This document shows positions 10,241 to 42,399 of a stretch of 64,000 bases of DNA, piece by piece. Location: NCBI GenBank assembly GCA_965644315.1, contig CBFFRQ010000043.1, positions 124,001 to 188,000 of the forward strand. The letters are read 5' to 3'. The notes under the pieces were generated by a model. The model ran no database searches and was not told where the DNA came from. It was given only the letters and a program-made list of their open reading frames with translations. The position numbers and the translations under genes were made by a program. Numbering within the stretch: position 1 is the first letter of the stretch; each line of letters begins with the position of its first letter. This stretch comes from Caecitellus pseudoparvulus (Eukaryota > Protista > Bigyra: Bicosoecida).

Positions 10241-13200
10241 ATGCCGGCAGCGCTCAGCCGCCTTTTGCTTGCGGCGGCGTTTGCCGTCGCAACGCGACGT
10301 GCTTTCAGCATCGACGGCAGTGGCTTCTCAACAAGTGCGTTCCAGCTCAAACGAAGTTGAGGGGCAACCTGCAGATGGTAGTGGTACTTTGCAGCTTGAT
10401 TCACCCCTGAAGAATCCCGCTCACCGTGCTCCGCTCAAGCAAGCGTCAGTTCAATCACTCGCTGCGGCGCTCCACCCTCAGACACCACACTTTCCCCAGT
10501 AAAGTTTGACCGAAGGCTGTCCAGCACCCTACCGCAGACGGCATGCCCAAGTGGATTCACGGCTGGGGCTGGTGTCGCTGCTGGGCGCTGTTTCCACTCG
10601 AACACAACTGAGCTTAACTTCCTCGATGCTGCAGAGTATTGCCGCAGCCAGCATCCGCTATCCATGCTCCTAAAGATTGACAACTTCACTGAACTCGCAG
10701 CAGTTCGCACAGCGCTGGGGATAACAATACCCCCAGAAATGTGGACGGGCATGCAGATGCACCCTGGTGAGTGCTGCATCGGCGCACAATGAAAGCCTCC
10801 AGCGACGGCCGTGCTGACCAACCTCACTGCATCGCAGATAATGTCTTTCGTTGGTACGATGGAAGCGAACTAGCAGCTGCCATCGACTCCAGCGGTGACT
10901 TTCTTCGAGATCCAGGGGGGTTTGGAGACAACTGTGCCCGCGTCACGAGCTCTGATCGTCTGCGAGACATCGGTATGTGAGCCCAAGTCATTTTGAGAGA
11001 CCATGCACGTAGTGTTCAAATCGCCAGCCCTGTCCTTTCCTCAGTATGCACATTGTCATATGGGCCAATATGTGAAATCAAGGAGACCATTGCTCTCTCT
11101 GACATGCTTCATCACATCCCATACCCTGTCACATGGGCCGAGGCGCAGCAAGAGTGCGCGAACCTTGGCATGGTCCTGGCTGCACCAGACGGGATTGTGG
11201 TGGGCGAGGAAGACCTCTTCGCCATCAGCAGCTCGTCAGAGGTGTGGGTAGGCGTCAGCTCCTTTGAATCTCCGTCCGAAGGCCCGAGTGAGGAGTTCAC
11301 CTCGGAGACCGGCTTGCCATGGGACTTGACGTACTCCATGGCGGCAGCCGCGACAGGGGGAGACACGAGGTGTGTCGCGGCCCACAACACGAATGGCTGG
11401 CAAGACACCTCTTGCTGCCAGGCAAAGCAGGCTGTGTGCCAGAAGCCGCCCACCATTCAAGGCCCGACAGCTTGTCCACAAGGCTGGGTACTGCGCCATT
11501 CGACAGACACGTGCCTGAGGAGTGTCCGGACAGACGCGACATTTCTCCAAGGGGTGACCGCCTGTGCTGCCCATGGAGCTGCTATGTGGGCTCCCAAGGC
11601 GACGGATGACACGACTGATGTGGATTTCTTTGTGAGTGCTGGCAACACGTGGGTTGGGGCGTTGCGCGAGCCAGATGATGGAGGCACCCTGACCTGGCGA
11701 CACCTGCAAACTGGGGAGGCTGTGGCCATGCTGGGAAGCATCACGGGTCCAACTGCTGTTGCAAGTGTAGCTGGGGGGGTTCTAACCTTCTCCACGCAGC
11801 CCATGACCTCATCCGCCCGAGTGGTATGCGAGCGTGGTATCTTCGGCACAAGCAGCGTCAAAGAGTGCCCCGAAGGCTGGCTGCCGCTCCTTGGGGCGTG
11901 TGTTCGCTCTTCCTTGTGGGAAGGGGGGGCTGCAACCATGACTACAAGTGACAATGCCAGGAGGCTCTGTGTTGCACAGGGTGGAAATGACTTGATCCAA
12001 GTGCACAGTGATGAGGCTGGTTTGGTTGTGGGCGCGATGATGTCCACGTCTGGGAGCATTCCTGCCCACACCTGGGTCGGTGCTGAACGAGATGGTGGCT
12101 CTAGCCGCCCGCGCTGGAGCATGTTTGGACAACATGAAGCTTGTGATGGCACGTACTCAAACACAATTGAAGGGCAAGCTGGGTGTCCCGCTAGCTTCAC
12201 CATCACAGCTGGCCAGCGCATGGGAGTCCGACGCGACAACGGCAAGCTTCAAGCAATAAGTGCGTCAGCCAAACGACCATACATGTGTGCTGTGTACCCT
12301 GGTGCATCTTGCCAAGCCGGAACAGGGTACAAATTTTACCGAGGGAAGTGCTACGGAAGGGAATACCTCGGTGGAGCAAGAACTTGGGAAGTAGCGGAGG
12401 CAGCATGTCGCGTCCGCGTGGGCGGCATCATCGGCAGCTGGCCTGACTTTTCTGATTGGTGGGCAATGACTTACGCAGAGGGTTGGACGGATAATAACGC
12501 AGGGAGCTTGTGGTACGGATTTGGCACGTACAAGAGCACTAACAACGCGTGGATCCACACAAATGGTGACCCACTTGACTCAACTGGCGTGCCTTGGGGA
12601 GATGGTGGGTCAGATCCGTATCCAGGGCCCATGGCAGACCGATGTAGTTTCAAAGGATTCAACTCTATTGGGGTTCAGCATGCATCATGCACTTCAAGTG
12701 TTGCGTGGCGTGCACTCTGTGAGTACTTGCCGTGGACTGCCCTGTCCTGCGACGGAGACGAGCATGAATGGATGGGCCACTGCTACCACTCAAATGACGG
12801 GCACAACTTTGAGGACTCAATTGACCATTGCATTAGCAGGCCAAGCGGGGGAGAGCTCGTCTCAATCAGGACTTGGCCAGAGTGGTTGGAAGTGGCCAAC
12901 GAGGTCCAGGCTCAGTCTCCTGGTCGAGTGCACTATACTGGCCTGGTCAGCATTGGACATGCTCCTTTTTTCGGAGATGAACCGTCTGAAAGGGATGCCT
13001 TTTACTGGATCGACGGCAGCGAATCCGCGTCCTTGCAGCAGCCTTGGGCTCTAGACCAGCCTGGGAGTGAAAATGAGGACTGCGGTGCATTGACAACATC
13101 TACAACACCAGACATTCACGATTATCCCTGCACAGATAGTTTAGCTGCAGCCTGCAAGCGTCCTCTTGTGCCGCCGTGTCCTCCTGGGTGGGTATACTCC

Positions 13201-16200
13201 AAGACCATCGGCAACTGGCGTGGGACGGAGGCCCGAGAAATGTGCTACAAACGGGTAGCCGTCGCCACTGACTACGCTGCGGCTGCGGCTGCGTGTGATG
13301 CCGAGTTCGAGGGCGCCAAGCTTGTCTCCATCACCAACAAGATCGAGGACTTGACTCTGCATGGGCTGCTGGCAGACGGTGACTGGATCGGGCTCCGGCG
13401 CCTCTCGCCGTTTTCCCTGCAGTATTACTGGCCAGATGGATCGTCGGTGCAGGAAGCAGGCGCATCAACGTCCGAGTATCAGGCGCCCTGGCAGTCCACG
13501 CCGCAGTTTGGGGCGGGTGGAGACTGTGTGCACTTTGTAAGCAGTGGCAAGGAATGGGCGCAGACTTCATGCGGGGGCTCGCGCGACTTCCTGTGCGAAA
13601 TGGAAGTGCCCATTCCAAAGGCCGACTTCTATTCCGGCCGCTTGGTGGACTTTCCCTTTCCTGGATCGCCCAAGGAGTCAGCTCCGGCTGATATTTGCTT
13701 GCCACCCGAGGCACAGCCCCCTGCTCCAACAGGGCTGTGCCCCGGAGGCTGGACTGAGCTGCCCACGCACCGAGCCTGCTACAAGCTTGAAACCACCCCT
13801 GTAACACAAGCTGACGGGGAAGAAACTTGTGCAGCCTCCGGCGGCTTCCTCGCTCGTCTGGGCTCTGAGCAAGAGCTGGACGATGTGTCAAGTGCACTCC
13901 TTGGAGGCTTGGACAACACGGCCGCTTGGGTGGGGCTGTCAGATGAAGATGCTGAGGGCACATTCATCTGGAGCGATGGGCGTCAGATGCAGTACGGCCA
14001 TCGTCTCTCCGGAGGCAACACCCTGCAGAGTGACTGCGCCAAGCTGACCAAGGTGAACGGACAAGTCAGCATAGCTCCTGCTTGGTGTGTTGAGGAGGTC
14101 AGACCTCTCTGCAAGCGGCACCTGCACACCCAAGGCGACACGGGGTACGTTCCGCTTCCAACTGGAAGCACGTGGACCGAGGCGAATGAAGCCTGTGCAA
14201 ACATGATGGGGCACCTGGCAGTGCCTCGATCAGTGGCCCAGGTGTCGTACCTGCTGGACACAGTGCTGAACGGGACCACGGGCCGCATCTGGACCGGGCT
14301 GACATCGCAGCCTGCAGGAGACGATGCCACTTGGCAAGCCTCTGACGGAGGTTCCTTCCCCCACGAAGTCCCATGGCTGTTGGGCCACCCCGCAGCGGGA
14401 AATTCCCACTGTGTCGTGGCGCGATTTGACGGCACCTTGCAAGATGTGCCGTGCTGCACGGCGTTTCCGGCGGTGTGTGAAGTGCCCGGCGCGTCCAGAG
14501 GGTGCCCTTCGGGCTGGTCTTGGTTTGGTGGCTTCTGCTACCGTCGAACTGTTGGAGAGTCTTTGAACAGAGCCCAAGCAACGGCACGATGCATGGAGCT
14601 TGGGGCAGCACCTGCCAGCTTGAGGTCCCAGGGCCAGCTAGACTGGCTTAAAGGTGTGATGACAGCGCCTGTGTCCCCCCACTCCAGTGTTTCTCTGGGT
14701 GTTCTCGTCAACGACGCTGTAGATGACTTTGAACCCGTTGACCCAGTTGCATTTCGAGCATCCGCCCCAGACTGGGCTGGTGGAGTCATTCCTCCCCATT
14801 CAGCCGATTTCTACCTTAGGACGACCCACAACCCTTTAGGCAGCCACGGTGCCGATTTAGGAGTAGTCCCCTCGTCGGCGACATCAGATGTGGTGTGTGA
14901 GCGCCCAGGGGTTGGAGGCGAGTTCTTCGCATGTCCCAGGGGCTGGCTGCCCCTGCAGGACAGGTGTGTTTGGGAGTCCAGCGTGCGCACCGACGGGCAG
15001 CTAGGCTACGCTGGCGCCCGCGCGCCTGCAAGTCTTCCATGGGGGACTGCACGTGCCGTTTGTCAAGCCTGGGGCGGCAGCGACCTGCTCCAGGTGGATG
15101 TGCCGCGGATCCGTGACGTTGCTGTGGCTGTGGCAACCATTGCAATTGGAGCTGAATCTGGCGGTGGTGGCGCGTGGGAGTTCTCTGCTCCGCCAGGTAG
15201 CAACTTTTTGACGACTGCTAGCAACGGTGCATCAAGTCGATGGCAAGGCGGGTCTGTCGCGAATGTTGGAGCAGGCTTGGGGCTGGCAGTTAACAGCGCA
15301 GGGTTGTATCAAGACATGCCGGCGAACTCAAAGTCACCGTTCATGTGTGAGATGCGGCTTGGAGACTCGGTGGCATGCCCTGCAACATACTCTCAAGTTG
15401 GGTACAGCTGCCTGCGGGCAATCAGCGCGCCTGGGACTGTGACAGCCACGAATGCCAGGGAAACTTGTCGAAATGAAGGTGGGATGCTTGCATCCGTGTC
15501 AACGGCCCGGGAGCTCGAGTGGATGCTCGATACGATTACGTCTGATGCATGGGTGGGCGTTCAGTGGCCCTCCAATGCGATGCCGACGAATGCGGACGGT
15601 GCGCCCATTTACAGAGGCAAACTTGACTTCTCCGGCTCTGACACGGCCGTGAAGCTGATTGATGGCACTGGCGCCCTGCAACGTGCATCACCAGGGACAA
15701 TGCTGGACTTCGCAATCTGCAAGTTGCCTGGCTTTCAGCTATATTTGGAAAAGCCCGTAAGCTTGACCCACATTTGGGGCTCAAGTGCGTACGGTCGCTC
15801 CACGGCGGGCAGCTTCAACGTCGCAAATAGACGAAGGCTCGCAACAAGCCTGGGTGGCGACCTTCTGACCTTCAATAATGTGGACGAGATGATTTATGTT
15901 GAAGAAAATGTCGTGACAGGTGGAGGAGAAGCTGTTGCATTTTTCCGCGAGGGATTTGAGGGTACAGCAGAAGATGACTTTCGCTGGGCAGACGGCAGCA
16001 ACGACTTGTTTGGCGCCAGCTTGGGTTCGCACGGTGGGAGCACAGCGTGTGCAAAGTTTGACGATTCTGGATCTTTCACTGCCATCGATTGCACCGTTTC
16101 AGAGAATGGCGCCATGGAAGTGCCCATCATTCCAGCCTGCCCGCCGAACATGGCGCCGCACGGCGGGCGATGTGTGGGATATCCTGCTGGGACTGGCGGA

Positions 16201-19200
16201 GGCACGTACGTTGCGGGCCAGGGCAGGTGTGAGCAACATGGGGCAGACCTGGCGTCGGTCTCCACTTTCTTGGACCACTTTGCCATTGCAGAGCGACTGG
16301 ACGGTGTGGTGGGTGGCAGCTACCCGAACTCGTTCTTTGGCCTGAGGCGACAGGAAGGCAATGGGGGAGACGACTGGCTGTGGACTGACGGCCGGCTGAT
16401 CTCCGACGAACCCTCCAGCTGCCAGACAGGTACCGGCACATACTGCAGCTGGCGTCCTGGAGAGCCCAACAGCACGCCTGGGGTCGAAGACTGTGGAAAC
16501 TTGGGGCTGTGGAACAACGATGAGTGGAATGATATGTCCTGCACCACATCGATTGCTGCAATATGTGGTATGCCGTATCTGCTGCGCCACTTCGACCCGG
16601 GGAAGCACGCAATGCTCTCCATGTCCACAGTTGGTGATGACATGGTTCCCGCTGCTCCCAGCTCAACCACCACGCCGTTTCCCGCTGCAACGTGTGGGGC
16701 ATCGGCATCGGCAACGCCGACGGCCTCGGTGAGCCCTGTTTACACTGTGTCAGGCACGCCGTCGCCTAGTCGATCCGGCACACCAAGCGTCAGCCCGACA
16801 TCAACAAGTACACCGAGCAGCACATCCACGGTTACTCCAACCAAAACGGCAACGCCAAGCACGAGTGCGACGGAAACCCCCACGCAGACGCCGTCGCCCA
16901 CATCCACTGGCACGCCCAGCGTTACAGCCAGCGTGACGCCCTCCCAAACCACGACAGGCACGCCCAGTGTCACCGCCACACAAACCATGACAGGCACACC
17001 CAGTGTCACTGCATCGCAGACCATGACAGGCACGCCCAGCGTGACGGCATCGCAGACGGCCAGCGTGACTGCCTCCCAAACTGCCAGTGTGACGGCGACA
17101 CAGACCATGACTGGCACACCCAGCGTGACTGCGTCGCAGACGGCAAGCGTGACGGCGTCTCAGACCGCCAGCGTGACCATGACCGGCACGCCAAGCCAGA
17201 CGATGACGGGGACGCCCTCCAACACTGCCAGCGTGACTGCGTCCAACACTGCCAGTGTGACTGCGTCCAACACTGCCAGCGTGACGCCTTCTAACACGGC
17301 CAGCGTGACGCCCTCCAACACGGCCAGCGTGACGCCCTCCAACACAGCCAGCGTCACGAGCACGCCATCCAACACGATGACGTCGACGCCCAGCGTGACG
17401 GCGACGTCCTCCGTGACGCCCACTTCCTCCCAGACGCCGTCGCCCAGCGCGCCCCACTGTCGCCCTCTGCCACGTGTGGCAGGCGGGGGCTCCTGGACCT
17501 GTGAGCGTCTGGGTGTGGCGGTGAACGGGACAGACCGGTACACGGGTCTGGACACGGAGTGTGTGGCACGGTGCACGGCGCCCCTGCTGCCATGGGGCTT
17601 CACACGGGCTCGGTGCAGTGGCACGAGTGAGTGGGCGTTTCACCTGGCCGATGGGACTGTGCTGTGGACGGCGTCTGACAGCGACATCGCGGCGGGGGCG
17701 TTCCCGGCTGCTGTGCAGTGTGTGGATGCGCGGCCGACAGGTGCAGGGGCAGTGACTGCTGTGGACCCATGCCAGCTGAATGCTGTGGTGTCGTGGGCTG
17801 ACTCTGCGCCACGTGTGCCGCTGCCTGCTTTGACGTGGGCCACTGTGACGGCAGTGGGCAGTGGGCTGGCGTGGATGGGGCCTTCCAGTGCGTCCACGGA
17901 TGGCAGTGTGACGGCGCCTGCGCCTGTGCCTCTTGCGGGCTCCCTGTCTGCAGGGTCGCTCGGGGCGCGGAGTGAGCTGGTGTCGCAGTGGTCTGCCATA
18001 GCGACTGCTCACTCCAACGGCATGCAGTACTACAGTGTGTGGACGTGGCAGGGCAGTGGCACACCCAGCCAGGCTGCACTGGTGCAGAATGGCACGCTGG
18101 TGGCGTTGGCTGGCAGCCGTGCTGCATTCGAGAGTGCGACGGGCGGCACGGTGGGCGCGTCAGTGGAGCGCAGCGGCAGCATCGTGCGTGCCATGAACGT
18201 GCAAGGTTTGCCCGAGGACCGGCTGCTGCGGTTCTACACCCGTGCAGGGAACTCCCTGGGCCAGAGCGCAGCGTCGGCGCCGTTCAGCCCTGTGCGGCTG
18301 TTGAGCAGCAAGTGCGACTTGTTCAGCCTGACAGTGGACGCCCGTGCTGTGGAGAGTGTGGACGTGTTCAACACGTCTGGCGCGTATGCCCGGCCGGCTG
18401 TGAGCGGCGCGTCCCCGCTGGAAGCCTTCGATCACCAGGGCAGTGACACTGCCGGCGCAGGCGGGGTGGTGGATGTGTCACCGAGCTCCATTGATCCGCG
18501 TCTGGGCAGGGCCGCGTGGCTGGGCGACTTGCGTGTGCCTGGTCAGCCCACCTCTGCGTCTGTGGAGACGCCCCTGTTGCTGTCTGCGGGCTCGACGCCG
18601 CTGGGCCTGGGGTTCGAGGTCGTCATGCCGAACCAGCCAGGCCCGAACGAAGTGGTGGTGGTGCAGTGCAGCGGGAGTGTACCGGGCGCTGTGCGTGTGA
18701 CGCCTGAGCAGTTCTCCCTGGACGCCAGTGTGGGCCCAGGCGGCATGCGGCAGTGGTTGCGGGCTGCTCCGCTGTCGCTGCGGGGCGTGAGCTTCCTGGC
18801 GCCCGAGACCTGGTCACGGGCCTTTGCAGTGACGTGTGTGATCACGTCCCAGCTACAGGGCGTGTCGTCTGGTCTGCAGGTGTACGCAGGCCTGCCGCCC
18901 ATCAGCGTGCCGTTTGCCAGCGTGCCGACAGTGTACCCGTTTGTGGGGGATGTGTTGATTGCGCTGCCGGGGGGCACAGGGTGGATGTCCAGCTGGGGCA
19001 GTGGTGGGGGTGACACGGGCGTGCCGGGGCGAGGCCTGGCGTCGCTGTCCACGAACTACAGCCGCATCCTGGCAGCGGCATCTGCGGCGCCCTTTGAAGG
19101 CAGGGCGGGGGACGGCAGTGGTGTGGAGGGTGACTCGCCGTTCACCGTGTTCACGGGTGTGGAGTCGCGGGATGGCGGGGACTACTTCGTCGTGACGCTG

Positions 19201-22200
19201 GGCGGCCTGCAGGACATCGTCATCGTCGCGGACTGCAAGCACCGTGTGCGGTGTGTGCCGACGACTGCAGTGCCAGGTTTCACACCGCCTGCCTCCAGCG
19301 CGGGTCTGCCTGTGCAGCCGTTTGCGTTTGTGCCAGGTGCACAGGTGTGGCTGGGGGACATGCAGCTGAACGTGTCTGCCGTGTCCAGTGACGGTCTGGT
19401 GCTGCGGCTGAGGATGCCATCGTACAGCAGCATGTGCCCCTCTGAGGAGGCATGTCGAGGCCAACGTGCCTACCGCGCGCTGTGGGTGGCCAACCCGCCC
19501 ATGGTGCCGGCTGAGTGGGTGGAGCACGTGAGCTCGACATGGCGTGCCCGGGCGGCAGGGACTGCCGTGGAGGACTGGGTGGAGGCGGGGCACCCGCTGT
19601 TCGTGGCGGGCGAGGCGGCGTGGGCATCTGCTCGGAGTGCCGGGACACTGCGTGTGGCTGGTGCGGGGGCTGGTGTCGTGCTGGGGGGTGTGTCAGCGTG
19701 CCCCCTGGCGTGCCCAGGCGCTGGCAGTGCAGCTCGTGCATCCCTGCCCACTGGCGCTGCTGCCGCCTCGCGCCGTCTGCAGACAAGTGCGTCTGCACCT
19801 GGAGAGCAGGCACACTCACTGCTGGGGTACGGGACATTCGTGACGGCGTCGTGTGTCGGGTACACGCCGCCTGGGCCAGTGTGCCGTGATGCCACCGACC
19901 CTGGGCATCGCAACTGTGCATTTGGCGCTGGGGATGACTGTGTGCGGTGTGGGGTGGGTGAGCTGTGTCCGGGAGGGTACCGTCGGTGGCCCAAGCCTGG
20001 GTACTGGGTGGCGTCTGAGGACTCCCGTGTGACGGCCAGCGCGTGTGCGCCTCCGTCGCTGGAGCGGTGCACAGGGTGGAACTACACGACGTCCACGGCG
20101 GCATGTGGTGTGGGGTATGAGGGCCGTCTGTGTGCGCTGTGCAGCAAGGGCTTCTACCCGAAGGACACTGGGGCTTGCACGCCATGTCCCAAGAGCCAGG
20201 GCGGGCTGGAGCTGGTGCTGCCGCCGCTGGCCTTTGCAGGGGCAGCCTTCGGGTTGTTCCTGGTGATGGCGACGGCCATCCGCATCGTGACGGCCATCAA
20301 GGGCGGCTCCTTCGCAGGGGGCATGAAGCGAGCGGCGCAGTTTGTCGTGTGGACGGTGAGCATGCTGCAGGTGATTGTGCAGGTGGGCAAGGCAGCCAGC
20401 CCTGGCCTGCCGCCGTACTTGCAGTCCCTGTACACACAGCTGAACGTGTTGCAGTTTGACAGCTCTGGTCTGGTGCCGCCTGCCTGTCTGGACCAGGCGC
20501 CGTTTACGGCTGAGAAGACGACGATGGGCATCGCGTTGGGGTTGTTGGTGCTGACGGTGGTGATGACTGCGCTGAAGGCGGAGAAGGCGGGGGGCAAGGG
20601 GAAGGGTGAGGCGGAGGGTGTGGACCCCCGGGCGGCTGTGGGTGTGTGGGGGAAGGTGAAGCCCCTGCTGCGGCGACTGACATTCACGTTGATGACGCTG
20701 ATGTATGCGATTGTGTGTAACACGGTGCTGGGGCTGTTGTTCTGCAGCCGCGAGCTGGTGGATGATGGGGGTGAGGTGGTGGAGAAGTGGCTGTTGGTGA
20801 GCAATCCCTTCTACGAGTGCTTTGCAGAGGACCACGTGGTGCCTGGCGCCATGGCGGTAGGCCTGTTACTGCTGTATGTGGTGGGGTACCCCGTCCTGAC
20901 GTACTTGTGGGTGCGTCGCAAGATCCACAAGGTGATGTTGAAGTCCCAGGCTGCCCAGGCGTATGCCCGTGCGACAGCCAAGGTGAACGCGGTGAAGGCT
21001 GCCCGGGCAGCTGTGAAGGCCAGTGGCAGCGCCGCCAAGTTGAAGAGCAAGGCCATCGCGAAGAAGGTGCGTCGGCAGTCCATGGCGGTTGGCAAGCGGG
21101 TGGTGGACCCGGTCGAGGCGGCAGCTGTGGCGATGGGTGACGTGGGTGGCTTTGACAGCGACGAGGAGAGCTTGCTGGCACAGCACCTGAAGGTGCATGG
21201 GGGCGGGGGCGACGGGAAGGAGGGGCCCCGGCGTGTGGACCTGGGTGAGCTGTACTTCGGGCAGGGCGGCGTGATGTCACGTGGTGCCGCTGCTCGGCTG
21301 GCGTCCTTGCCTGCATCTGTGGTGAGTCCTGTGGTGAAGGCGAAGGCTGTGGCAGCTGCCGAGGCGGCGGCTGGTGCGGGTGGTCGGGTGCGCAAGAAGC
21401 GCTTCTCGTTGATGCCCACGCGAGGGGCAGCGGCCAAGACCGCCGCGGCACCTGCCCTGCGCAGTGCCGGTGTGGGGGGCGCCAGCACCGCGAAGGGCGG
21501 CACGCTGAACCCCATGTTCGTGAGGGCGCGGCCAGGGTACAAGGCAGATGCCGAGCTGCTGATGCGGGCAGGCCGGCTGGGGTCACGTGCGGCGCTGCCG
21601 GGTGGTGCGTACGCCGGCCTGTCTGCGGCACAGCACTTGCTGATGCCATCTGAGAAGGCTGTGCAGCTGCAGAGTGCAGATGCCTTCAGCATTCGCGACC
21701 CCGAGGAGCTGGAGCAGGTGGCGGCGTACCGCAGCACGGTCATGTCGTCGTCCTTCGGGGCGATGGATGCCGTGCGGCAGCGGGCTCGTGCGCTGCGGGC
21801 GGGTCTGGCAACGGGCCAAGACGACGCGGAGTGGCTGCGGAAGGATGTGCATGGGCTGTACGTGGCGCGCACAGCGTTCCACCCGATGTTGAGTGACCCT
21901 GCAGCGTACAGTGAGATGAGCGTGGGGCGGCGTGGGGGGGGTGCCCGCAGCAAGGCCAGCCCCAGTGTGGGCACGGCGAACCCCCTGGCCATGTTGAAGC
22001 ATGGCATGCGAGGGGGGGATGTGGGCGCTCCTGCCGCGACACCGACAGCCAGTGCCAAGCGTGGTGGGTATGGCGCCACGCTGAAGGCGCGTGTGGTGCA
22101 TGGGCAGGTGAAGGGGGATGATGCCGACGACGAAGATGCGGGGGCTGGTGGCGGGTGGTGTGCGTGCTGCGGGTGCCTGTGCAGCTGCTGCTTCTACGCC

Positions 22201-27443: not shown

Positions 27444-27541
27444 CTTGCGCAGTCCTGCCTCAAGAATCGAAGGCAGCGGCCATCACAACCTGTCAATGCA
27501 GTGGCATCGATCGATAATCATTCATTACGCACACGCTTGCG

Positions 27542-32300: not shown

Positions 32301-35300
32301 AGGGACTGCAGGTACGGCGGCAGGCCAGGGCTGGCTGCCTTGCCCACCTGCACAATCACCTGCAGCATGCTCACCGTCCACACGACAAACTGCGCCGCTC
32401 GCTTCATGCCCCCTGCGAAAGAGCCGCCCTTGATTGCCGTCACGATGCGGATGGCCGTCGCCATCACCAGGAACAACCCGAAGGCTGCCCCTGCAAAGGC
32501 CAGCGGCGGCAGCACCAGCTCCAGCCCGCCCTGGCTCTTGGGACATGGCGTGCAAGCCCCAGTGTCCTTCGGGTAGAAGCCCTTGCTGCACAGCGCACAC
32601 AGACGGCCCTCATACCCCACACCACATGCCGCCGTGGACGTCGTGTAGTTCCACCCTGTGCACCGCTCCAGCGACGGAGGCGCACACGCGCTGGCCGTCA
32701 CACGGGAGTCCTCAGACGCCACCCAGTACCCAGGCTTGGGCCACCGACGGTACCCTCCCGGACACAGCTCACCCACCCCACACCGCACACAGTCATCCCC
32801 AGCGCCAAATGCACAGTTGCGATGCCCGGGGTCGGTGGCATCACGGCACACTGGCCCAGGCGGCGTGTACCCGATACAGGATGCCGTCACGAATGTCCCG
32901 TACCCCAGCAGTGAGTGTGCCTGCTCTCCAGGCGCCGATGCACTTGTCTGCAGACGGCGCGAGGCGGCAGCAGCGCCAGTGGGCAGGGATGCACGAGCTG
33001 CACTGCCAGCGCCTGGGCACGCCAGGGGACACGCTGACACACCCCCCAGCACGACACCAGCCCCCGCACCAGCCACACGCAGTGTCCCTGCACTCCGAGC
33101 AGATGCCCACGCCGCCTCGCCCGCCACGAACAGCGTGTGCCCCGCCTCCACCCAGTCCTCCACGGCAGTCCCTGCCGCCCGGGCACGCCATGTCGAGCTC
33201 ACGTGCTCCACCCACTCAGCCGGCACCATGGGCGGGTTGGCCACCCACAGCGCGCGGTAGGCACGTTGGCCTCGGCATGCCTCCTCAGAGGGGCACATGC
33301 TGCTGTACGACGGCATCCTCAGCCGCAGCACCAGACCGTCACTGGACACGGCAGACACGTTCAGCTGCATGTCCCCCAGCCACACCTGTGCACCTGGCAC
33401 AAACGCAAACGGCTGCACGGGCAGGCCCGCGCTGGAGGCAGGCGGCGTGAAACCTGGCACTGCAGTCGTCGGCACACACCGCACACGGTGCTTGCAGTCC
33501 GCGACGATGACGATGTCCTGCAGGCCGCCCAGCGTCACGACGAAGTAGTCCCCGCCGTCCCGCGACTCCACACCCGTGAACACGGTGAACGGCGAGTCAC
33601 CCTCCACACCACTGCCGTCCCCCGCCCTGCCTTCGAAGGGCGCCGCAGATGCCGCTGCCAGGATGCGGCTGTAGTTCGTGGACAGCGACGCCAGGCCTCG
33701 CCCCGGCACGCCCGTGTCACCCCCGCCACTGCCCCAGCTGGACATCCACCCTGTGCCCCCTGGCAGCGCAATCAACACATCCCCCACAAACGGGTACACT
33801 GTCGGCACGCTGGCAAACGGCACGCTGATGGGCGGCAGGCCTGCGTACACCTGCAGACCAGACGACACGCCCTGCAGCTGGGACGTGATCACACACGTCA
33901 CTGCAAAGGCCCGTGACCAGGTCTCGGGCGCCAGGAAGCTCACGCCCCGCAGCGACAGCGGAGCAGCCCGCAACCACTGCCGCATGCCGCCTGGGCCCAC
34001 ACTGGCGTCCAGGGAGAACTGCTCAGGCGTCACACGCACAGCGCCCGGCACACTCCCGCTGCACTGCACCACCACCACTTCGTTCGGGCCTGGCTGGTTC
34101 GGCATGACGACCTCGAACCCCAGGCCCAGCGGCGTCGAGCCTGCAGACAGCAGCAGGGGCGTCTCCACAGACGCAGAGGTGGGCTGACCAGGCACACGCA
34201 AGTCGCCCAGCCACGCGGCCCTGCCCAGACGCGGATCAATGGAGCTCGGTGACACATCCACCACCCCGCCTGCGCCGGCAGTGTCACTGCCCTGGTGATC
34301 GAAGGCTTCCAGCGGGGACGCGCCACTCACAGCCGGCCGGGCATACGCGCCAGACGTGTTGAACACGTCCACACTCTCCACAGCACGGGCGTCCACTGTC
34401 AGGCTGAACAAGTCGCACTTGCTGCTCAACAGCCGCACAGGGCTGAACGGCGCCGACGCTGCGCTCTGGCCCAGGGAGTTCCCTGCACGGGTGTAGAACC
34501 GCACCAGCCGGTCCTCAGGCAAACCTTGCACGTTCATGGCACGCACGATGCTGCTGCTGCGCTCCACTGATGCGCTCACCGTGCCGCCCGTCGCACTCTC
34601 GAATGCAGCACGGCTGCCAGCCAACGCCACCAGCGTGCCGTTCTGCACGAGTGCAGCTTGGCTGGGTGCGCCACTGCCCTGCCACGTCCACACACTGTAG
34701 TATTGCATGCCGTTGGAGTGGGCAGTCGCTATGGGAGACCACTGCGACACCAGCTCACTCCGCGCCCCGAGAGACCCTGCAGATAGGGAGCCCGCAAGAG
34801 GCACGGGCGCAGGCGCCGTCACACTGCCATCCGTGGACGCACTGGAAGGCCCCATCCACGCCAGCCCACTGCCCACTGCCGTCACAGTGGCCCACGTCAG
34901 AGCAGGCAGCGGCACACGTGGCGCAGAGTCAGCCCACGACACCACAGCATTCAGCTGGCATGGGTCCACAGCAGTCACTGCTCCAGCACCTGTCGGCCGC
35001 GCATCCACACACTGCACAGCAGCCGGGAACGCCCCCGCCGCGATGTCGCTGTCAGACGCCGTCCACAGCACAGTCCCATCGGCCAGGTGAAACGCCCACT
35101 CACTCGTGCCACTGCACCGAGCCCGTGTGAAGCCCCACGGCAGCAGGGGCGCCGTGCACCGTGCCACACACTCCGTGTCCAGACCCGTGTACCGGCCTGT
35201 CCCGTTCACCGCCACACCCAGACGCTCACAGGTCCAGGAGCCTCCGCCTGCCACGCGTGGCAGAGGGCGACAGTGGGGGGCGCTGGGCGACGGCGTCTGA

Positions 35301-38300
35301 GACGATGTGGGCGTCACGGAGGACGTCGCCGTCACGCTGGGCGTCGACGTCATCGTGTTGGATGGCGTGCTCGTGACGCTGGCTGTGTTGGAGGGCGTCA
35401 CGCTGGCAGTGTTGGAGGGCGTCACGCTGGCAGTGTTGGAAGGTGTCACACTCGCCGTGTTAGAAGGCGTCACGCTGGCAGTGTTGGACGCAGTCACACT
35501 GGCAGTGTTGGAGGGCGTCCCCGTCATCGTCTGGCTTGGCGTGCCGGTCATGGTCACGCTGGCGGTCTGAGAGGCAGTCACGCTTGCCGTCTGCGACGCA
35601 GTCACACTTGGCGTGCCCGTCATTGTCTGTGTCGCCGTCACACTGGCAGTTTGGGAGGCAGTCACGCTGGCCGTCTGCGATGCCGTCACGCTGGGCGTGC
35701 CTGTCATGGTCTGCGATGCAGTCACGCTGGGTGTGCCCGTCATGGTTTGTGTGGCGGTGACACTGGGCGTGCCTGTCATGGTCTGGGAGGGCGTCACACT
35801 GGCTGTCACGCTGGGCGTGCCGGTGGACGTGGACGATGGCGTCTGCGTGGGGGTTTCCGTCGCACTCGTGCTTGGCGTTGCCGTTTGCGATGAAGTCGGC
35901 GTCGATGTGCTACTGGGAGTCGGGGTAGAAGTCGAAGTTGGCGTCGCAGATGATGAGGACGTTGGGCTCACCAAAGGCTGCTGGGACGGGGAAGGGAGCG
36001 CAGAAGTTCCAGGTCCACACGCTGGCAAAGCGATTGGCGTGAAGGTCGCGACTGGCGCCGGAAGCGCTGTCGCCCCTGGGCCAATCGCGAAGCCGTCGTT
36101 TGTCGTCGGGGTGAACGGTGGAGCACCCGCACACCGCAAAGCATGAGTCGACGTGCAAGCGGCCACAGACAGTTCGCCGTCTTCGTCTCCTTCCGAGATC
36201 ACGCATCCTGATGTGGTGGGTGATGATGTCCACTGAAGGTAGCTCGTGCTGGCATCATGTACGACGGAGCCGTCCACCCACGTGACTGTGTTTGCAGTGT
36301 AGTCAAACGTGCCGCCCATGAATGCAGTCGTTGCGGTTACAAAACCTTCGTTCTCTGAGTACGAATTCGCGGACTCGTGCTGCATGCGGTCCTTCAACAT
36401 GACGGGGGTCATGCCAAGTGCAGCGCAATCATTCTGGGACTGAGCAAAGGTTCGGGAAGCGGCGGGTTTTGCATCGTGGCACATGCCACCAAACCAAGCC
36501 CCTGCCGCGCAGGGAGAAGTTGGCGGGTATTCGCAAATGAAGTCGACCGTATTCGTGCAAGATCCATCCGAAAAAGCGAAATCACTCGAGTCCGTCACCG
36601 TCGCACAGTCAGCACCAGTGTCTCCGTCTCCAGAGTTCCACACCACAGCCACACGAGAGGAGCTTCCACTGACCCATTGCCAGGCACTGAAGGTATTCTC
36701 ACCCACGTGAGCCTTGGTAAACCCAATTCGCGCAGCCACGTTCGCGTTCGGGAGCTCGTCAATTAGGCGAAGCTTGGCAAACGTGTCAATGGACATGAGA
36801 TCGCCTCCGTAAGATGATTGACACAGCCGCCTCGCCACCCGCGCGGAGGTGCCTCCCGAGTCTACACGCTTGTAGCACATGCCGTTAAATTTGACACCCG
36901 AGCTTGGACATGTAATTTCCTCACTCCATGCAGGGTGCGAACACACCATGTCATCGTCGGTGTCGGTGTAAGTATACGTGCGTGCTATTCCAGCACCTCC
37001 CGTTCTCACAGCTCTGTTCGTGCCTGTCGGATGCCCGGCTGCCCACTTTATGCGCCGGGGCTCTCCCCCTGCCGCGCCACTCCAGTACGGGATCCCACCA
37101 AAGTGCGCAACTCCTGTGGCAGAGTAGCCCACTCCTGATAGCAGCTCCGTTGACCACCACTCCTGCTGCTGCAGAGTGGTCCAGGAAGCGAGGGCAGAAG
37201 GTGGGCTCAAGCCCGCGCAGTGGTCCACCCATCCGTTCAAATCTTTTGATGGCTGGTTTAGTTCGGCCTTGTAGCACTGGCCTTGGTAGTGCTGCCAGCC
37301 TGCAGGGCAGCGATCCAGCGGGGATCCAGTCAGCTCGGCCCAAGCCTGCTCGCAGATAAACGTCGCCTTGTCACTGCCACCCCCGAAACCCCAGCTGCCG
37401 TCGTCAGCAATTTGCACATAGTCGCCGTTTGTACAGCTCGCGCAGGTCCCTGCACCAAAATTGTTGAAAGTTTGGCCGCACAAATTTGCGGTGCTGCCTC
37501 CCTCGATGGCTTGGGAAGAGGAGCACTGCGCATCAACCCACAGGTCGTGAGGAGAACCGCGCATGGCCACTTCCTCGAGCACTGCGGCAGTTCCAGCCCC
37601 GTGCATGTTCACAAGACTGCCACCTGGAAGGGCGTCACACAGCCGAGCGGCGACAGGCGCAGTCGCTGAGCTCAGCGACGCGGCAGCACTACCTGGCTTC
37701 GCCCACAGAGAGTGGCGCCAACAGCGCCCAAACACCGGAACAAAGCCATGCGCACAGCCTGCAAACCAGTGATGCCGAGCAGGAATCTGGCAGATGGATC
37801 TGGTGGAAGTGGATGCCGCCTGAAAGCTTGCGGACCCGCTAGAGGCGACGAACGCCGCAGTGTTTGCGCTGAGGCTTGGCAGGCCTACGAGCTTTGCAAC
37901 GTCGTCTTGCATCTCCTGTGTCGTGGATAGTCCTGAAATGATGGCAAGCCCAATGTAAGCCTTGTCGAAGGTTGACTTGCTCGAGAGCAGGCTCTCTGCA
38001 AAAGTCTTGTCTGCAGCTGTGGAGATCTGTGCAAGTGCGCCACCCTTCAAGAAGCACCGCGCAACGTTCTTCTCGAAAGTTGCTGCTTCTCGAGACACCC
38101 CGTAACAAAACCCGTCGTCCCGGGCAGTGAAGCCGTTCGGGCAGTGGTGGAACAAGGAGCGCTTGCAGACAAAGCGCCTCGTTCGGCAGCACTGGTCCAT
38201 TTCAGCCTTTAGCTGAGCAGCACGAAGCATGACACAGTCGTTGCCTCCCGAGGATGCAGCAGGTCCCGCGCCGGCCCACTCGTCCCACCGACCGAGAGCT

Positions 38301-41300
38301 GTTCCGTCACTTGTGACCCAATTGGAGGGATTCGAGATGCGATTTAGTCCCAGCCACAAGTCCCCACCAGGCATGGCAACATCTAAGGTGGCGTTTACAG
38401 CTGCAACCTCAGCGGAAGATCCAGGAAGCCACAGTTGTGCTCCCATGTCTTCGCAAGCAGCCTCGGCTGCAGACCAATCGAGGGCTTCGTTCACTGGAAA
38501 GAACCCACTGCTGTCGTGAGTGTACACGGGTATCTGGCATATGGCCCGCATCGCTTCGCCACAGGCTGTGGGAATGAACTGCACGCTGGAGTCTGTGCGC
38601 TTCATGTGCACACAGTCTTGGCTTCCTGTGTTGCCGCTGTGAATCACTTCAACGCTGCTTCGCACTGGAGTGCCGTCATCCCACACAAACTGGCCCTCCT
38701 CGACGTCATCCCCCATGCCCACCCATGCCCTCGCCGTTCCAGCCATGGATGCCCCCGCGAAATTCGCCAACGCAGCCAATTCGGCGTCAGTGTATGCGAT
38801 GGCGAGTCGTGCACCCGTCGCGGATGCTTCACAGGTGTCAGCTGCGAGCATGTATGTCTCGCTGGTCGATTGCCACTTGTAGCACATGTGCACTTCCGGC
38901 ACTTCCGTAAAGCCTGCTGGGCAATTCCCCGTCGTGATGACGGGCGGTTCAGGCGGCTCGCAGGTGCCCTCTGGCGCCGATGGAGGCGGTGCCGGCAGCC
39001 AGTCCAGACGGATGAAGTTGCCCTCCCAGGGCTCCGGAACTGGGAAAGGTGTGTCCATCTCGCAGATGCTGTGCCGGGTGGTGTCGCAAGATACCAGCAA
39101 CCATCCATTTCGCCCGGTCTGTCTGACGCACAGCGTGGAAGGGTCAAAATGGTCAGGCACTGCGTCCCAAACCTGCCACTCAGGGCTTGTTGGCGGATTC
39201 GTCAGCACAGAGCCATCCGCCCACGTGACTGCGTTCGACACTGCTGACAGGCGTCGACCACCAATCCACTCGCCACCACCTGTCATGATTCCCTGCACAG
39301 AGTGCCACTCCCAGTACGAGTTGGGCGTGAACAGCAGAGCCCCATGAGAAGCACACTCGGCCTCAGCGGCTGCATGGTTTAGCTGACTCGCAGCCGCCAC
39401 GCGTTTGTAGCACTTGTCCTTCGTCCCGCTCACGTCGTTCCCAACGAACTTCCCGTGCCTCCAACCACTGGGGCAAGGGGAAATGCGTTTGCGTTCACAC
39501 ACTGGAGTTCTCTGCAGCGTACACTCCTTGTCCTGAAACTCGCCCGACCCGTCAATGATACCACACATTTGGTCATTCTCGTTTGGCTGCCCGCTTTTCC
39601 ACCTTACTCCGAGTTGCGGCTCCCCATTGATCCAGTAGAAGTTCGCACGTTCCTGAGCAGTCGGATTGTCGCACTGGTCCCCTGGCAACCCGATGCAAGA
39701 GAATCCTATGTGAGCTTCGCCTCCTAGGATTCCGTCTGCGAATTGCCACTCGCTGTACGCGTTGAACACTGCAAGGGTGCTGGCATAGTTAAAGAAACAA
39801 GTCGAGGCACCAACTTCAGCATTCTGTGCCGTGCTGTGGGCTTTGTAACAAGAGCCACCGAAGAGCGACGACCCGGCCGGACAGTCACCCATCTTGGATG
39901 GAATGTACTCGCAAATGGCGTAGTCGATGTCGTTTGACTCGAATCTGTCGTCAGTGCACGTATGTGCGGTGATCTCTGAGTTTTGTATAATCAAGCATTG
40001 GCCTGCTGTGGACGATGGAACTGGCAGCGTTTCAAACGGCATGAAGTTCCCATGGCCCAACGGAGCTCCATTGGCCAGCTGCCAGCCAGGGTTGACGTCG
40101 ATTGAAGTGACTCCGATCCAGGTGTTGTCAGAGTTGTCCCCAAACCAGCCTTCGTTCACGAAGAAGTCAAGCTTCTCCACGGAGTCCATGGGAGACAAGA
40201 AACCTTTGTGTGTGTTTCGACAAGTTTCTTCGTATTGGTGCCAATTGTCCCTGTCGCCAACGATGCGATCGTAGCACTTGCCTTCAAAGTACGTAAAGGT
40301 TCCATCACACATCTTGTCAGGGTGCAGGGCGCAAATATACGGCAACTTGGTGTCCTCGCTGACCAGCTCGATGTTCTTCGAACTTGCCCCGAGGGTGACT
40401 GCCTGCCCAGACACTTCATTCAGCTGCGATCCAGAGCAGGTTGCCCCTGTGTCAGGGTAGGTTCCATCACACACATCCACGCTGTCCACAGACCAGACGT
40501 ACTTGGTGCCATCTGGCTCTGCGCCCACCCAAAGGCCAGTTTCACCGTTCTTGATAACGAGCTGCAGCGCTATGTCGTACAGCAACGAGTTCTCTAACTG
40601 AATGAGGCCAGTGGAGCCAAGAGAGGCACAGCTGGCGTAGGCTTCTTCCTTCGTCGCAGTCTTTTGAGCAGGGAGCTGATTGCTGGGCAACAAACACATG
40701 CCCATGACTTGCAGCCATCCTCGTGGACATGGGTTGTCTGCGAACTGCCCGTCGTACACTGGCCGCTCACAAACGGTTCGTCGGGCAAGTGTGAGAGGTG
40801 AAGGCTCGAACCGGAGGTTGCCAGTGCCGTCATCATCTGCCTGACCAACGTTATTCCCTGAACCGACCACAGCTGGGGTAAAGGCGGCTCCAGTTGTCAG
40901 ACTCTTCCAGCCTCCAACATTATAGATTCCAGCAAACACGTTCAACCCTATGCTCGGTAGGAACCAGTCAAGCACAAAATCATCAACCGTGTCCCCTCTG
41001 GGCTGCCACATGCGAGCTCCAACAGCAGCGCAGTCTGCAACCCCGGCGAACCAATCCGGACTTCGCGTCACCTGCCTCAAGCAAGTGCCAGCTGAGCCGT
41101 GTTCGACCCATCCAATGGGGCATGCGCCTTCTCGTACGTTCACGAGCGGCTTCATGCAAATGACACGCTTAGCGCTGCAACAGGACACATCCACATACTG
41201 GGAGGAGGAGCCCTCCATCATCAGGCATTCAGTGTCTGGATCTCCCTTCGGAAATCCTGACTTATATACCCGATCATGGAACATGCTGTACCCCGATTCC

Positions 41301-42399
41301 GTGACGAAGTCGCCGGTTCCAGGGGCATGCAGCGTTGATGCTGCGATCCAAATATCCTCCCCTGGCAGATACCCTGCAATGTCTGACCGCGAGATGTCGG
41401 GCTGGGGTAATGCCATGGCCATGCCGATGCTAGCACAGGCTGCGTTGCCTTCCACCCAAGTCATCAGCCCGGGCAGCACGGCGATGGCGTCGTCTGACGT
41501 CACAGTCTTTGGCGTCTCGCAGATGTAGCCGCCATTGGCATCAACATCAGGACACACTGCGATCAAGCAGCAAGGCGGCGTTTGGCATGGCAGCGTGTCC
41601 TCGATTGAGGCTTGTCACTCACTCTGGTTGTCAATGCGCCAAAGTCCAGATTGCCTCCTCACGTAGTAACACCTGCGCAAGTTTTCCCGATTACTTATCC
41701 AGGGTATTCCAACATCATAGCTGCTATCCAAAGGCTCGCCTTGTTCGTCGTACACGTCTGCGAAAAAGCAGGGAGCGAAGAAAGCGTGCAACGTGAGACT
41801 TGTTTGAATCCGCAAGGCGCAGAGCGCTGCGTAAACGCACGCGTGCCGTTGCCTTCGATGCCAAGCCAATACCGTATGCCACTAGTCAAGCTCAGGGCAC
41901 TTGGCAACAAAAGAAGCGCTGCCGCCGTCTCGGGCGATGCAAGGTGGGCGTACGGGTCCAACTTGGCACACTCGGCAGCGGCAGCTGGAGCTGAGAGCGC
42001 TGTGTCGAACTTGCGGTAACAGCTGCTGCTGGACTCAGTCCAGGAAGCTGGACAAGATGACCGAATGGTCACAGTCGTCAGTTTCCGCTTTGCAACACTG
42101 CCGGCAAGATGTGGAGGCAAGCCCTCACGCGCAACCTCGGCGAGGTGCACTGCAGCAGGCGGAGTGTGGGCAACCTCGCCCAAAGCTCCCAGCGGCGCCA
42201 GCGAGGCTAGCAACACAAGCCACAGCCATCCACGGCTGGCTCTATGCACATTCAACGTCGGCCCCAGTCCCTGCTTCGTGCGGGCCCCTCGTCGGCCAAT
42301 GCAGGGGCAGCGTTGCCTTGAGCGAGCTGCCCGTGCGATGCACCGCTGCGGCGCCAGTCCGCCGCAAACGTGCAAACCAGGCTCGGGCGCGGCCCCCAT
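29327..42399 (-). CDS. Giant multi-C-type-lectin multipass membrane receptor, copy B (same architecture as copy A)
   Basis: 5' ORF with hydrophobic GWLWLVLLASLAPLGALG. Introns 41758-41840 and 41557-41622 join it to the 4079-aa ORF. 14 CTLD units; C-terminal approximately 2185 aa almost identical to copy A. Confidence 0.9.
29330..35886 (-). repeat. Right arm of 6,557-bp inverted repeat (constant region of receptor B)
   Basis: Reverse complement of 16844-23400 with scattered substitutions and the same length. Confidence 0.95.
35280..35970 (-). repeat. Mucin-like Thr/Ser/Pro stalk repeats, copy B
   Basis: Same units and unit order as in copy A. Confidence 0.9.

What the first reader, a model, noticed from the sequence alone, without database searches (positions are those of the whole stretch)
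10241..42399. Palindromic pair of giant lectin receptors with variable heads and a homogenised constant body
Seen: two convergent genes of about 13 kb share a 6,557-bp inverted repeat (16844-23400 / 29330-35886) with no net indel and roughly 25 amino-acid differences in about 2185 by eye. Their 14-CTLD heads are colinear domain by domain and share two intron positions in CTLD1, but have little obvious DNA identity. A single recent duplication cannot yield old heads on young bodies. Inference: the duplication is old and the stalk/TM/cytoplasmic module is repeatedly homogenised by arm-to-arm gene conversion or head swapping, while the glycan-sensing heads diverge. That would be a variable/constant receptor repertoire, perhaps for prey, pathogen or self recognition. 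Crossover between arms would also flip the 5.9-kb spacer holding three genes.
Basis: partly seen in the sequence, partly recalled or inferred. Interest (0 to 1): 0.92.

Follow-up and report, generated by a model that had tools for sequence, protein, structure and literature searches.

The report
Giant lectin genes sharing a homogenised body
Three giant membrane-protein genes of a marine protist carry anciently diverged 14-lectin-domain heads on a 6.5-kb stalk, membrane and tail part that stays about 98% identical, most likely through gene conversion; this is a good new example of a known evolutionary process, not a new kind of system.

Summary
Arms 16796-23402 and 29328-35934 form a 6.6-kb inverted repeat, 98% identical with no indel. 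Downstream of the sharp step at 16844 there are exactly 25 amino-acid differences in 2184 codons.

The two convergent genes have co-linear 14-CTLD heads that are only about 28% identical. Synonymous divergence is saturated in the heads and about 0.05-0.07 in the body.

New findings:
- A third copy on another contig carries the same body at 97%. Its head is a mosaic relative to gene A.
- Homology stops exactly at three different stop codons, and no flanking DNA is shared.
- A homologue from another species is as far from head A as head B is, yet its body is only about 60% identical.
- An unrelated family on contig C50 shows the same pattern, plus a discrete 550-nt conversion tract.
- The head-B/body junction is present in a marine metagenome and in another culture.

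An assembly artefact and synonymous-site selection are therefore excluded. Ectopic gene conversion of the body, in at least three events, is the best explanation.

The palindrome is not needed for this, because the unlinked copy is equally homogenised. "Repertoire", prey sensing and spacer flipping remain untested. The scan's own notes had already recorded the stop-codon and stalk boundaries on this window.

The parts
10241..23403 (+). Gene A. It has short 5' exons (signal peptide and CTLD1) followed by one giant exon that runs to the TAA stop.
   Evidence: ORF 10993-23403. The candidate start ATG at 10241 has a signal-peptide-like N-terminus. GT-AG intron candidates lie at 10767-10837 and about 10973-11044.
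11113..16587 (+). Variable head A: 13 CTLDs in the big exon, with CTLD1 lying upstream in the 5' exons. EPN...WND is present only in the last CTLD.
   Evidence: Pfam Lectin_C, E 1e-76. Domain map and motifs.
12712..16722 (+). Part of head A that is 90% identical at DNA level to head C on contig C68. The region 5' of 12712 is saturated between A and C.
   Evidence: dS is graded from 1.27 to 0.2 over 12739-13270.
16844..17460 (+). Ser/Thr-rich mucin-like stalk of imperfect tandem repeats. The 5' boundary of A/B identity lies at its start.
   Evidence: Stalk dS is 0.22-0.32 against 0.05-0.08 downstream.
16844..23400 (+). Constant body, arm A: stalk, ~830-aa membrane-proximal ectodomain, Cys-rich module, multi-pass membrane module, long cytoplasmic loop and tail.
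19810..21099 (+). Conserved core of the anchor: an Ephrin-receptor-like Cys-rich module plus the first helical membrane bundle.
   Evidence: There are 1213 relatives at E<=1e-3. The AF2 model has pLDDT 88.5. Ephrin-receptor similarity is weak, E 0.004. No PDB fold matches.
23404..29326 (.). Unique spacer between the two stop codons. It holds both unrelated 3' UTRs, an ABC1-kinase gene (24184-25527, +) and two ORFs without a family (26097-27443 +, 27542-28714 -).
29330..35886 (-). Constant body, arm B.
   Evidence: Gene B ends in a TAG stop at 29327-29329.
35887..42399 (-). Variable head B, including 5' exons and two candidate introns (41840-41758 and 41622-41557). It is unique in the genome at DNA level.
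   Evidence: The junction with the body at this base is seen in runs X1, X3 and X10.

Best explanation
A, B (this window) and C (contig C68) are old paralogues of a giant surface membrane protein.

Architecture: signal peptide, 14 C-type-lectin-like domains, mucin-like stalk, ~830-aa proximal ectodomain, Cys-rich module, ~8-9 transmembrane helices, large cytoplasmic loop and tail.

The 3' 6.5 kb, from the start of the stalk to the last codon, has been overwritten between the copies by ectopic (interlocus) gene conversion or non-allelic homologous recombination. This took at least three separate events with different 5' end-points. The heads kept their ancient divergence.

Tracts cannot run past the stop codon because the 3' UTRs share no homology. 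They rarely enter the heads, where homology is lost. The conserved body therefore stays a recombination substrate and the heads do not.

Shown: the divergence step, the nested mosaic, the third copy, the coding-limited homology and the same behaviour in a second family.

Inferred: the mechanism (conversion), its recurrence, and any benefit of keeping one signalling or anchoring body under different binding heads.
For: 1. Divergence step. dS is saturated in the A-B heads. In the body it is 0.067 (0.052 without the stalk), with dN/dS 0.08.

2. Third copy. Gene C at C68:418520-430966 has a body 97% identical to A and B. Its flanks share no homology with the window, so it is a dispersed paralogue and not a haplotig.

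3. Nested tiers between A and C:
- saturated 5' of 12712;
- patchy dS of 0.12-0.69 across 12712-16700;
- dS 0.07 in the body.

4. Coding-limited homology. Identity ends exactly at the stop codons, which are TAA, TAG and TGA, and the 3' UTRs are unrelated.

5. Relative-rate test with homologue P0001 from another organism:
- head identities are A-B 28.5%, A-P0001 27.1% and B-P0001 28.4%;
- body identities are A-B 99% and A-P0001 58-63%.

6. Other in-genome paralogues (D, F, G, H) have bodies only 30-39% identical, so the near-identity is specific to A, B and C.

7. Independent replicate on contig C50. Genes J and K have RCC1-like/TIG heads and share their 3' 5.2 kb at 98.2%, with dS 0.02-0.07. 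Their middles are saturated. A third gene, M, carries one ~550-nt patch with dS 0.025 inside saturated sequence, which is a discrete conversion tract.

8. Sawyer-type permutation shows clustering of discordant sites: SSCF P=0.009 for A-B and 0.007 for B-C. Mismatches are over-dispersed.

9. Not an artefact:
- the differences between arms are mostly synonymous;
- both ORFs are intact;
- the head-B/body junction at base 16844 is present in a 2019 marine metagenome (X3) and in another culture (X10).
Against: - There are only three copies, and with three sequences every variable site is a singleton. Phylogenetic incongruence inside the body cannot be shown.
- The longest identical runs are not significant for A-B or A-C.
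- The three bodies are roughly equidistant, which would also fit one burst of events.
- The higher dS of the stalk may come from repeat-unit shuffling, not from an older layer.
- The GC3 contrast (heads 0.60-0.62, body 0.78) also occurs in P0001 and partly in non-homogenised paralogues. It is therefore not diagnostic of biased gene conversion.
- No population or long-read data were available.
Confidence: 0.8

Rival explanations
1. A small number of one-off chimeric duplications ('body transplants' or head swaps by unequal or illegitimate recombination in the repetitive stalk), with no continuing conversion. The bodies have simply diverged since then.
For: - The three bodies are about equidistant, with dS 0.05-0.08.
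- There are no long 100%-identical tracts.
- The maximum-run test is not significant for A-B or A-C.
- The 5' boundary lies in a tandem-repeat stalk.
Against: - At least three events with different 5' end-points are still needed.
- dS is graded at the boundaries (12739-13270 in A-C; 0.229, then 0.138, then 0.06 in J-K), which is not a clean step.
- The short 550-nt tract in M shows that conversion does operate in this genome.
- SSCF clustering is significant.
- Every event would have had to end at the last codon.
Confidence: 0.17
2. Assembly or haplotype-merging artefact: the arms, or copy C, are alleles or collapsed repeats joined wrongly.
For: - The assembly has 215 contigs.
- Some other loci look duplicated between contigs with identical spacing, for example C20 versus C68:860-900 kb.
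Against: - Flanks, UTRs and heads of A, B and C are unrelated.
- 111 of the 137 arm differences are synonymous.
- All ORFs are intact.
- The spacer holds a real ABC1 gene.
- The head-B/body junction recurs in independent public runs.
Confidence: 0.02
3. The body is not young. Synonymous sites there are held constant by selection (codon bias or RNA structure) or by a locally low mutation rate.
For: Body GC3 is 0.78 against 0.60 in the heads.
Against: - Head and body are in one transcript, so expression-linked codon selection is equal.
- The step is from saturated dS to 0.05 within about 50 nt.
- The homologous bodies of in-genome paralogues D, F, G and H are only 30-39% identical, and P0001's body is 58-63% identical. 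The sequence is therefore free to change.
Confidence: 0.01

Closest known systems
Domain-restricted gene conversion in paired immune receptor genes (KLRC/NKG2; PMC3210942) and long-lasting conversion in mammalian gene pairs (PMC2720389)
   Same: Paralogues are homogenised over only part of the gene, with a sharp step in dS. The other part diverges and keeps a different function.
   Different: - In NKG2 it is the ligand-binding lectin domain that is homogenised and the signalling part that differs. Here it is the reverse.
- These genes are about 13 kb, nearly intron-less, and belong to a protist.
Variant surface-protein families of parasites with a variable ectodomain and a conserved 3' part (Plasmodium var exon 2/ATS, trypanosome VSG C-terminal domain, Giardia VSP tail). 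Cited from my own knowledge and not tested here.
   Same: A variable outward-facing head sits on a conserved membrane and cytoplasmic part. The conserved 3' end is kept alike by recombination among family members.
   Different: - Those families have tens to thousands of members, mutually exclusive expression and often subtelomeric loci.
- Here there are three members, no evidence of switching, and the constant part is 2185 aa.
Large palindromes with arm-to-arm gene conversion (for example the human Y-chromosome ampliconic palindromes). Cited from my own knowledge.
   Same: An inverted repeat of several kb with a unique spacer and highly similar arms.
   Different: - Arm identity is 98%, not above 99.9%.
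- Homology is confined to coding sequence and ends at the stop codons.
- An unlinked third copy is equally similar, so the palindromic geometry is not what maintains identity.
Eukaryotic Ephrin_rec_like/DUF7630 multi-pass membrane proteins carrying LRR, lectin or TIR parts (ESM Atlas clusters)
   Same: The anchor module of A, B and C has the same predicted fold (TM-score 0.52-0.56). These proteins likewise carry diverse ectodomains.
   Different: - The family is uncharacterised, with no solved structure and no literature.
- Whether it signals is unknown.

Membership tests
C-type lectin-like domain proteins (Pfam PF00059) | A CTLD sequence profile match above the curated cut-off. | tested here: met
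   Whole-protein scores are 240 and 230 bits; the head segments alone score 255 and 243 bits. The cut-off is 22.6 bits. 13 and 11 domains were mapped.
C-type lectin-like domain proteins (Pfam PF00059) | Ca2+-dependent sugar-binding motifs (EPN or QPD plus WND), which are needed for true lectin activity. | tested here: inconclusive
   EPN...WND occurs only in the last CTLD of A and C. B has only a QPN without WND. All other CTLDs lack the motifs. Sugar binding is therefore not established.
Concerted evolution by interlocus gene conversion | Regionally low synonymous divergence between paralogues, with a sharp boundary against old flanking sequence. | tested here: met
   dS goes from saturated to 0.05-0.07 at 16844. 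The same is seen in the J/K pair.
Concerted evolution by interlocus gene conversion | In the converted region, paralogues within a genome are more alike than homologues between species. Outside it they are not. | tested here: met
   Body identity is 99% for A-B against 58-63% for A-P0001. Head identity is 28.5% for A-B against 27.1% for A-P0001. Caveat: the orthology of P0001 is assumed, not shown.
Concerted evolution by interlocus gene conversion | Discrete mosaic tracts detectable statistically (Sawyer/GENECONV type). | tested here: inconclusive
   SSCF P is 0.009 (A-B), 0.15 (A-C) and 0.007 (B-C). The maximum run is significant only for B-C. A clear 550-nt tract exists in the second family.
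Concerted evolution by interlocus gene conversion | Ongoing exchange: bodies cluster by strain, or tracts are polymorphic. | not testable with these tools
   Only collapsed short-read contigs of other strains could be laid on the window, and they cannot be phased.
Antigenic-variation-type variable/constant repertoire (var, VSG, VSP) | A large family of alternative heads on the same constant part. | tested here: not met
   There are only three bodies in the 30.6-Mb genome. No further heads appear at the junction in runs X1, X3 or X10.
Antigenic-variation-type variable/constant repertoire (var, VSG, VSP) | Mutually exclusive or switching expression. | not testable with these tools
   The only RNA data are metatranscriptome contigs lying on the shared body.
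Palindrome maintained by arm-to-arm conversion | Identity is maintained specifically between the two arms and includes non-coding arm sequence. | tested here: not met
   Identity stops at the stop codons. The unlinked copy C is as similar as the partner arm.
Class C GPCR / Ephrin receptor | Fold or sequence match of the Cys-rich plus membrane module. | tested here: not met
   The only sequence match is to the Ephrin-receptor Cys-rich stretch, at E 0.004. Foldseek E values are >=0.07 with TM-scores 0.07-0.16. The best VIA Z-score is 6.8, on generic helical bundles.

The most novel reading that the evidence does not exclude
In this marine protist, giant surface receptors are built as cassettes. 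A body (stalk to stop codon) is kept uniform by frequent ectopic conversion, while binding heads are shielded from it.

The same rule holds in at least two unrelated head families (lectin, and RCC1-like/TIG). In both, the constant part has dS ~0.05 and GC3 0.78, against GC3 0.59-0.62 in the variable part. That similarity would reflect a steady state between mutation and conversion.

The result would be a selected variable/constant receptor architecture for prey or pathogen recognition in a unicellular predator.
Probability: 0.15. Interest if true: 0.8.

Novelty: new member of a known kind. Interest (0 to 1): 0.5.

Why it matters
The case shows, with a clean internal control, that part of a 13-kb gene can be kept almost identical among dispersed paralogues while the rest is as diverged as between species.

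It recurs in a second receptor family of the same genome. Ectopic conversion may therefore be a general force shaping the giant surface proteins that dominate this marine protist's cell surface.

It gives a concrete system, with three genes and defined junctions, for two questions:
- whether free-living phagotrophs diversify binding heads on a common anchoring or signalling body;
- how homology limits set conversion boundaries.

It also flags a widespread, unstudied eukaryotic membrane-anchor module that has a confident predicted structure and no solved relative.

Tried and rejected
- **Body domains.** Pfam scans of body pieces gave no family above cut-off. DUF7630 scored only 16.6 bits.
- **Fold searches of the anchor model.** Neither Foldseek against the PDB nor VIA-wide gave a meaningful match. 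A literature search for DUF7630 returned nothing.
- **Metagenome scan.** An exact 28-mer just inside the junction found nothing in JGI metagenome contigs.
- **Homologue search for the body.** With the length window, the search for homologous proteins found only two proteins. The exhaustive representative search was needed.
- **GC3 as a mark of biased gene conversion.** Rejected as diagnostic. Body GC3 (0.78) is simply typical of the genome. The head-low/body-high contrast also occurs in P0001 and partly in non-homogenised paralogues.
- **An 'edge effect' at the 3' end.** The extra mismatches there are non-synonymous tail changes, not raised dS.
- **Organism identity.** It could not be established.
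  - No LHC genes were found, and the sequence occurs in marine metagenomes.
  - I considered a Cafeteria-like bicosoecid from memory, but published assemblies are 34-36 Mb at 70% GC (PMC6972860), which does not match 30.6 Mb. I make no claim.
- **Read layout.** Read laying returned only collapsed short-read contigs. These cannot phase the three bodies, bridge head A into the body by the tool's 31-letter rule, or test spacer orientation.
Full report
**1. The observation**

The window holds one large inverted repeat. Its arms lie at 16796-23402 and 29328-35934, are 6607 nt long and 98% complementary, and are separated by 5925 nt. A base-by-base comparison gives 154 mismatches and no indel.

The arms are the 3' halves of two convergent giant ORFs: A at 10993-23403 (+, 4136 aa) and B at 29327-41566 (-, 4079 aa). 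Upstream of each lie short exons encoding a signal-peptide-like start and the first CTLD. GT-AG introns of 60-90 nt can be placed at equivalent positions of CTLD1 in all copies. This is in-silico support only.

Lectin_C is the only Pfam family detected. A profile built from the proteins themselves maps 13 CTLDs in the big exon of A and 11 in B. There is room for two more in B that are too diverged to score. In-ORF CTLDs 1-8 are reciprocal best matches between A and B, and A's CTLD12 finds B's CTLD12 one way only, so the heads are co-linear where this can be judged.

The body differs by exactly 25 amino acids in 2184 codons.

**2. Divergence profile**

I computed Nei-Gojobori dS and dN on a codon alignment.

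| Region | Pair | dS | dN or dN/dS |
|---|---|---|---|
| Heads | A-B | saturated | dN 0.7-1.3 |
| Body, whole | A-B | 0.067 | dN 0.0054, dN/dS 0.08 |
| Body without the stalk | A-B | 0.052 | dN/dS 0.10 |

The step between head and body values occurs within one window at about 16844.

Of the 137 A-B body differences, 111 are synonymous. Both copies are therefore real sequences evolving independently under purifying selection.

The junction lies at the start of a Ser/Thr-rich stalk made of imperfect tandem repeats. The stalk itself has a higher dS (0.22-0.32) than the rest of the body. This could be an older layer or the effect of repeat-unit shuffling, and I cannot separate the two.

**3. A third copy and nested mosaicism**

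The window's genome is 30.6 Mb in 215 contigs. It contains a third body at C68:418532-425054 that is 97% identical. This body belongs to a 4149-aa ORF, gene C. The 70 kb around C shares nothing with the window outside the genes, by blastn or tblastx, so C is a dispersed paralogue and not a haplotig.

C relates to A in tiers:
- 5' of window position 12712, dS is saturated (dN 0.43).
- From 12712 to about 16700, DNA identity is 90% and dS is patchy at 0.12-0.69. It is graded from 1.27 to 0.2 over 12739-13270.
- A hypervariable patch lies at the EPN sugar-site loop of the last CTLD.
- In the body, dS is 0.07.

Head B has no DNA-level relative anywhere in the genome. The three bodies are roughly equidistant: dS is 0.052 for A-B, 0.068 for A-C and 0.078 for B-C, excluding the stalk.

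At least three events with different 5' end-points are therefore required. The unlinked copy is as homogenised as the palindromic partner.

**4. Boundaries**

Identity among A, B and C ends exactly at the stop codons, which are TAA, TAG and TGA. The 3' UTRs are unalignable. Homology is thus limited to coding sequence in all three loci.

This fits old paralogues whose non-coding flanks have decayed. Conversion tracts would then be confined to the stretch where purifying selection has preserved enough identity.

**5. Outgroup and paralogue controls**

A homologue from another organism, P0001, is 3562 aa and sits on a 13.5-kb ENA metagenome contig. It has the same architecture.

| Comparison | Head identity (1135 ungapped columns) | Body identity |
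|---|---|---|
| A-B | 28.5% | 99% |
| A-P0001 | 27.1% | 58-63% |
| B-P0001 | 28.4% | — |

Other paralogues in the same genome (D, F, G, H) have the same architecture, but their bodies are only 30-39% identical to A, B and C. The body sequence is therefore free to evolve, and its near-identity in A, B and C is not due to constraint or a low mutation rate.

**6. Tests for tracts**

A Sawyer-type permutation over 243 variable body sites gives significant clustering: SSCF P is 0.009 for A-B and 0.007 for B-C. The longest runs are mostly not significant. Mismatch counts per 200 nt are over-dispersed, with a variance-to-mean ratio of 1.7-3.6. This is modest support for several tracts within the body.

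**7. A replicate in another family**

On contig C50, two divergent genes share an inverted repeat of 5168 nt at 98.2%, which is their 3' halves. They are J (66718-76203, -) and K (75972-85949, +). Both carry RCC1-like and IPT/TIG domains on the same kind of anchor.

- Their middles are saturated and their constant parts have dS 0.02-0.07. dS is graded at the boundary, and identity stops 7-10 codons before the stops.
- A third gene, M, is 35-60% identical to J and K throughout. The exception is one ~550-nt patch with dS 0.025, which is a textbook conversion tract.

Conversion therefore demonstrably acts on these giant genes. The layout of a 'variable distal part on a constant 3' part' is a property of the genome and not of this locus alone.

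GC3 is 0.59 in the variable part and 0.78 in the constant part in J and K. In A, B and C it is 0.60-0.62 against 0.78. However, 0.78 is typical of the genome, and P0001 and some non-homogenised paralogues show a similar contrast. I do not count GC3 as evidence for biased conversion.

**8. Independent data**

The stretch 13900-19899 is held by several cultures, by 2019 marine metagenomes and by a marine metatranscriptome. Only short-read contigs were available to lay on it.

In three runs a contig enters the body at exactly 16844 from a different upstream sequence: X1, metagenome X3 (255 nt) and culture X10 (126 nt). That upstream sequence is head B, window 35916-35887 reverse-complemented. The head-B/body junction therefore exists outside this assembly.

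The contigs collapse the three bodies. Metatranscriptome contigs lie on the body, which is only weak evidence of expression.

**9. What the protein is**

Only the last CTLD of A and C keeps EPN...WND, and B has none. 'Lectin' is therefore a fold assignment and not a shown activity.

The body has no Pfam family. Its Cys-rich plus membrane core has 1213 relatives at E<=1e-3 among 1.84 billion representatives, in proteins of 500-4800 aa with varied N-terminal parts.

A 48-sequence alignment gave a confident model with pLDDT 88.5 and pTM 0.81. It shows a disulfide-rich beta module with a weak Ephrin-receptor-like signal at E 0.004, followed by a helical membrane bundle. No solved structure matches it. 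ESM Atlas neighbours are eukaryotic proteins with Ephrin_rec_like/DUF7630 and LRR or TIR parts.

A receptor or adhesin role is plausible but untested.

**10. Verdict**

The core inference, old heads on a homogenised young body, is well supported.

- The mechanism is most likely ectopic gene conversion bounded by the extent of homology, with confidence about 0.8.
- The palindromic arrangement is incidental to the homogenisation.
- The 'repertoire' is three genes.
- Spacer flipping and a prey- or pathogen-sensing role remain speculation.

This is a new and clean member of a known kind of process, domain-restricted concerted evolution of receptor paralogues, in an uncharacterised protist protein family.

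Noticed in passing
G000:C50:66718-96468 (loci L027-L029): A second trio of giant genes (J, K, M) has RCC1-like and TIG domains on the same anchor type. J and K are a head-to-head inverted pair sharing their 3' 5.2 kb at 98.2%. M carries one ~550-nt patch at 98-99% inside ~40%-identical sequence.
   Followed up: partly
G000:C68:395577-401411 (gene D; L011/L014), stalk at about 399927-400190: Distant paralogue D has a body only 35% identical to A, and lies 18 kb from gene C. Its stalk is (PSNTASVT)x12, the same 24-nt unit as the distal stalk of A, B and C, at 80-86% DNA identity. This points to stalk repeat units being exchanged or conserved across otherwise diverged genes.
   Followed up: partly
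window 16414-16570 (last CTLD of A, EPN...WND loop): This is a hypervariable patch. A and C are only 63% identical here, inside sequence that is 89-91% identical. Another culture (X10) shows a third variant starting at 16446. It may be a spot of diversifying selection at the only canonical sugar-binding site.
   Followed up: partly
window 22100-22250 (protein A, aa ~3720-3750): A dense cysteine cluster (about 15 Cys in 25 residues) lies in the long cytoplasmic loop between the two membrane bundles. It resembles a multiple-palmitoylation patch.
   Followed up: no
whole genome G000: At least 25 loci with open frames of 3000-8600 aa carry CTLDs and/or the Ephrin-like membrane anchor: 56 Lectin_C matches and 61 anchor matches. 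Giant surface proteins are a major component of this 30.6-Mb genome. No LHC gene was found.
   Followed up: partly
G000:C20:29222-65574 versus G000:C68:862588-898926: Two giant anchor-bearing ORFs recur on two contigs with identical scores and identical 35.6-kb spacing. This could be a large segmental duplication or an uncollapsed haplotig.
   Followed up: no
window 10993-16843, 35887-41566 and C50 variable regions: The variable parts of both families have GC3 of 0.59-0.62, well below the genome-typical 0.73-0.80 of their own constant parts and of neighbouring genes. The cause is unexplained.
   Followed up: partly
window 2442-9623: The upstream gene is an ECM29-type proteasome adaptor with an inserted FG-repeat stretch (weak Nucleoporin_FG match).
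   Followed up: no
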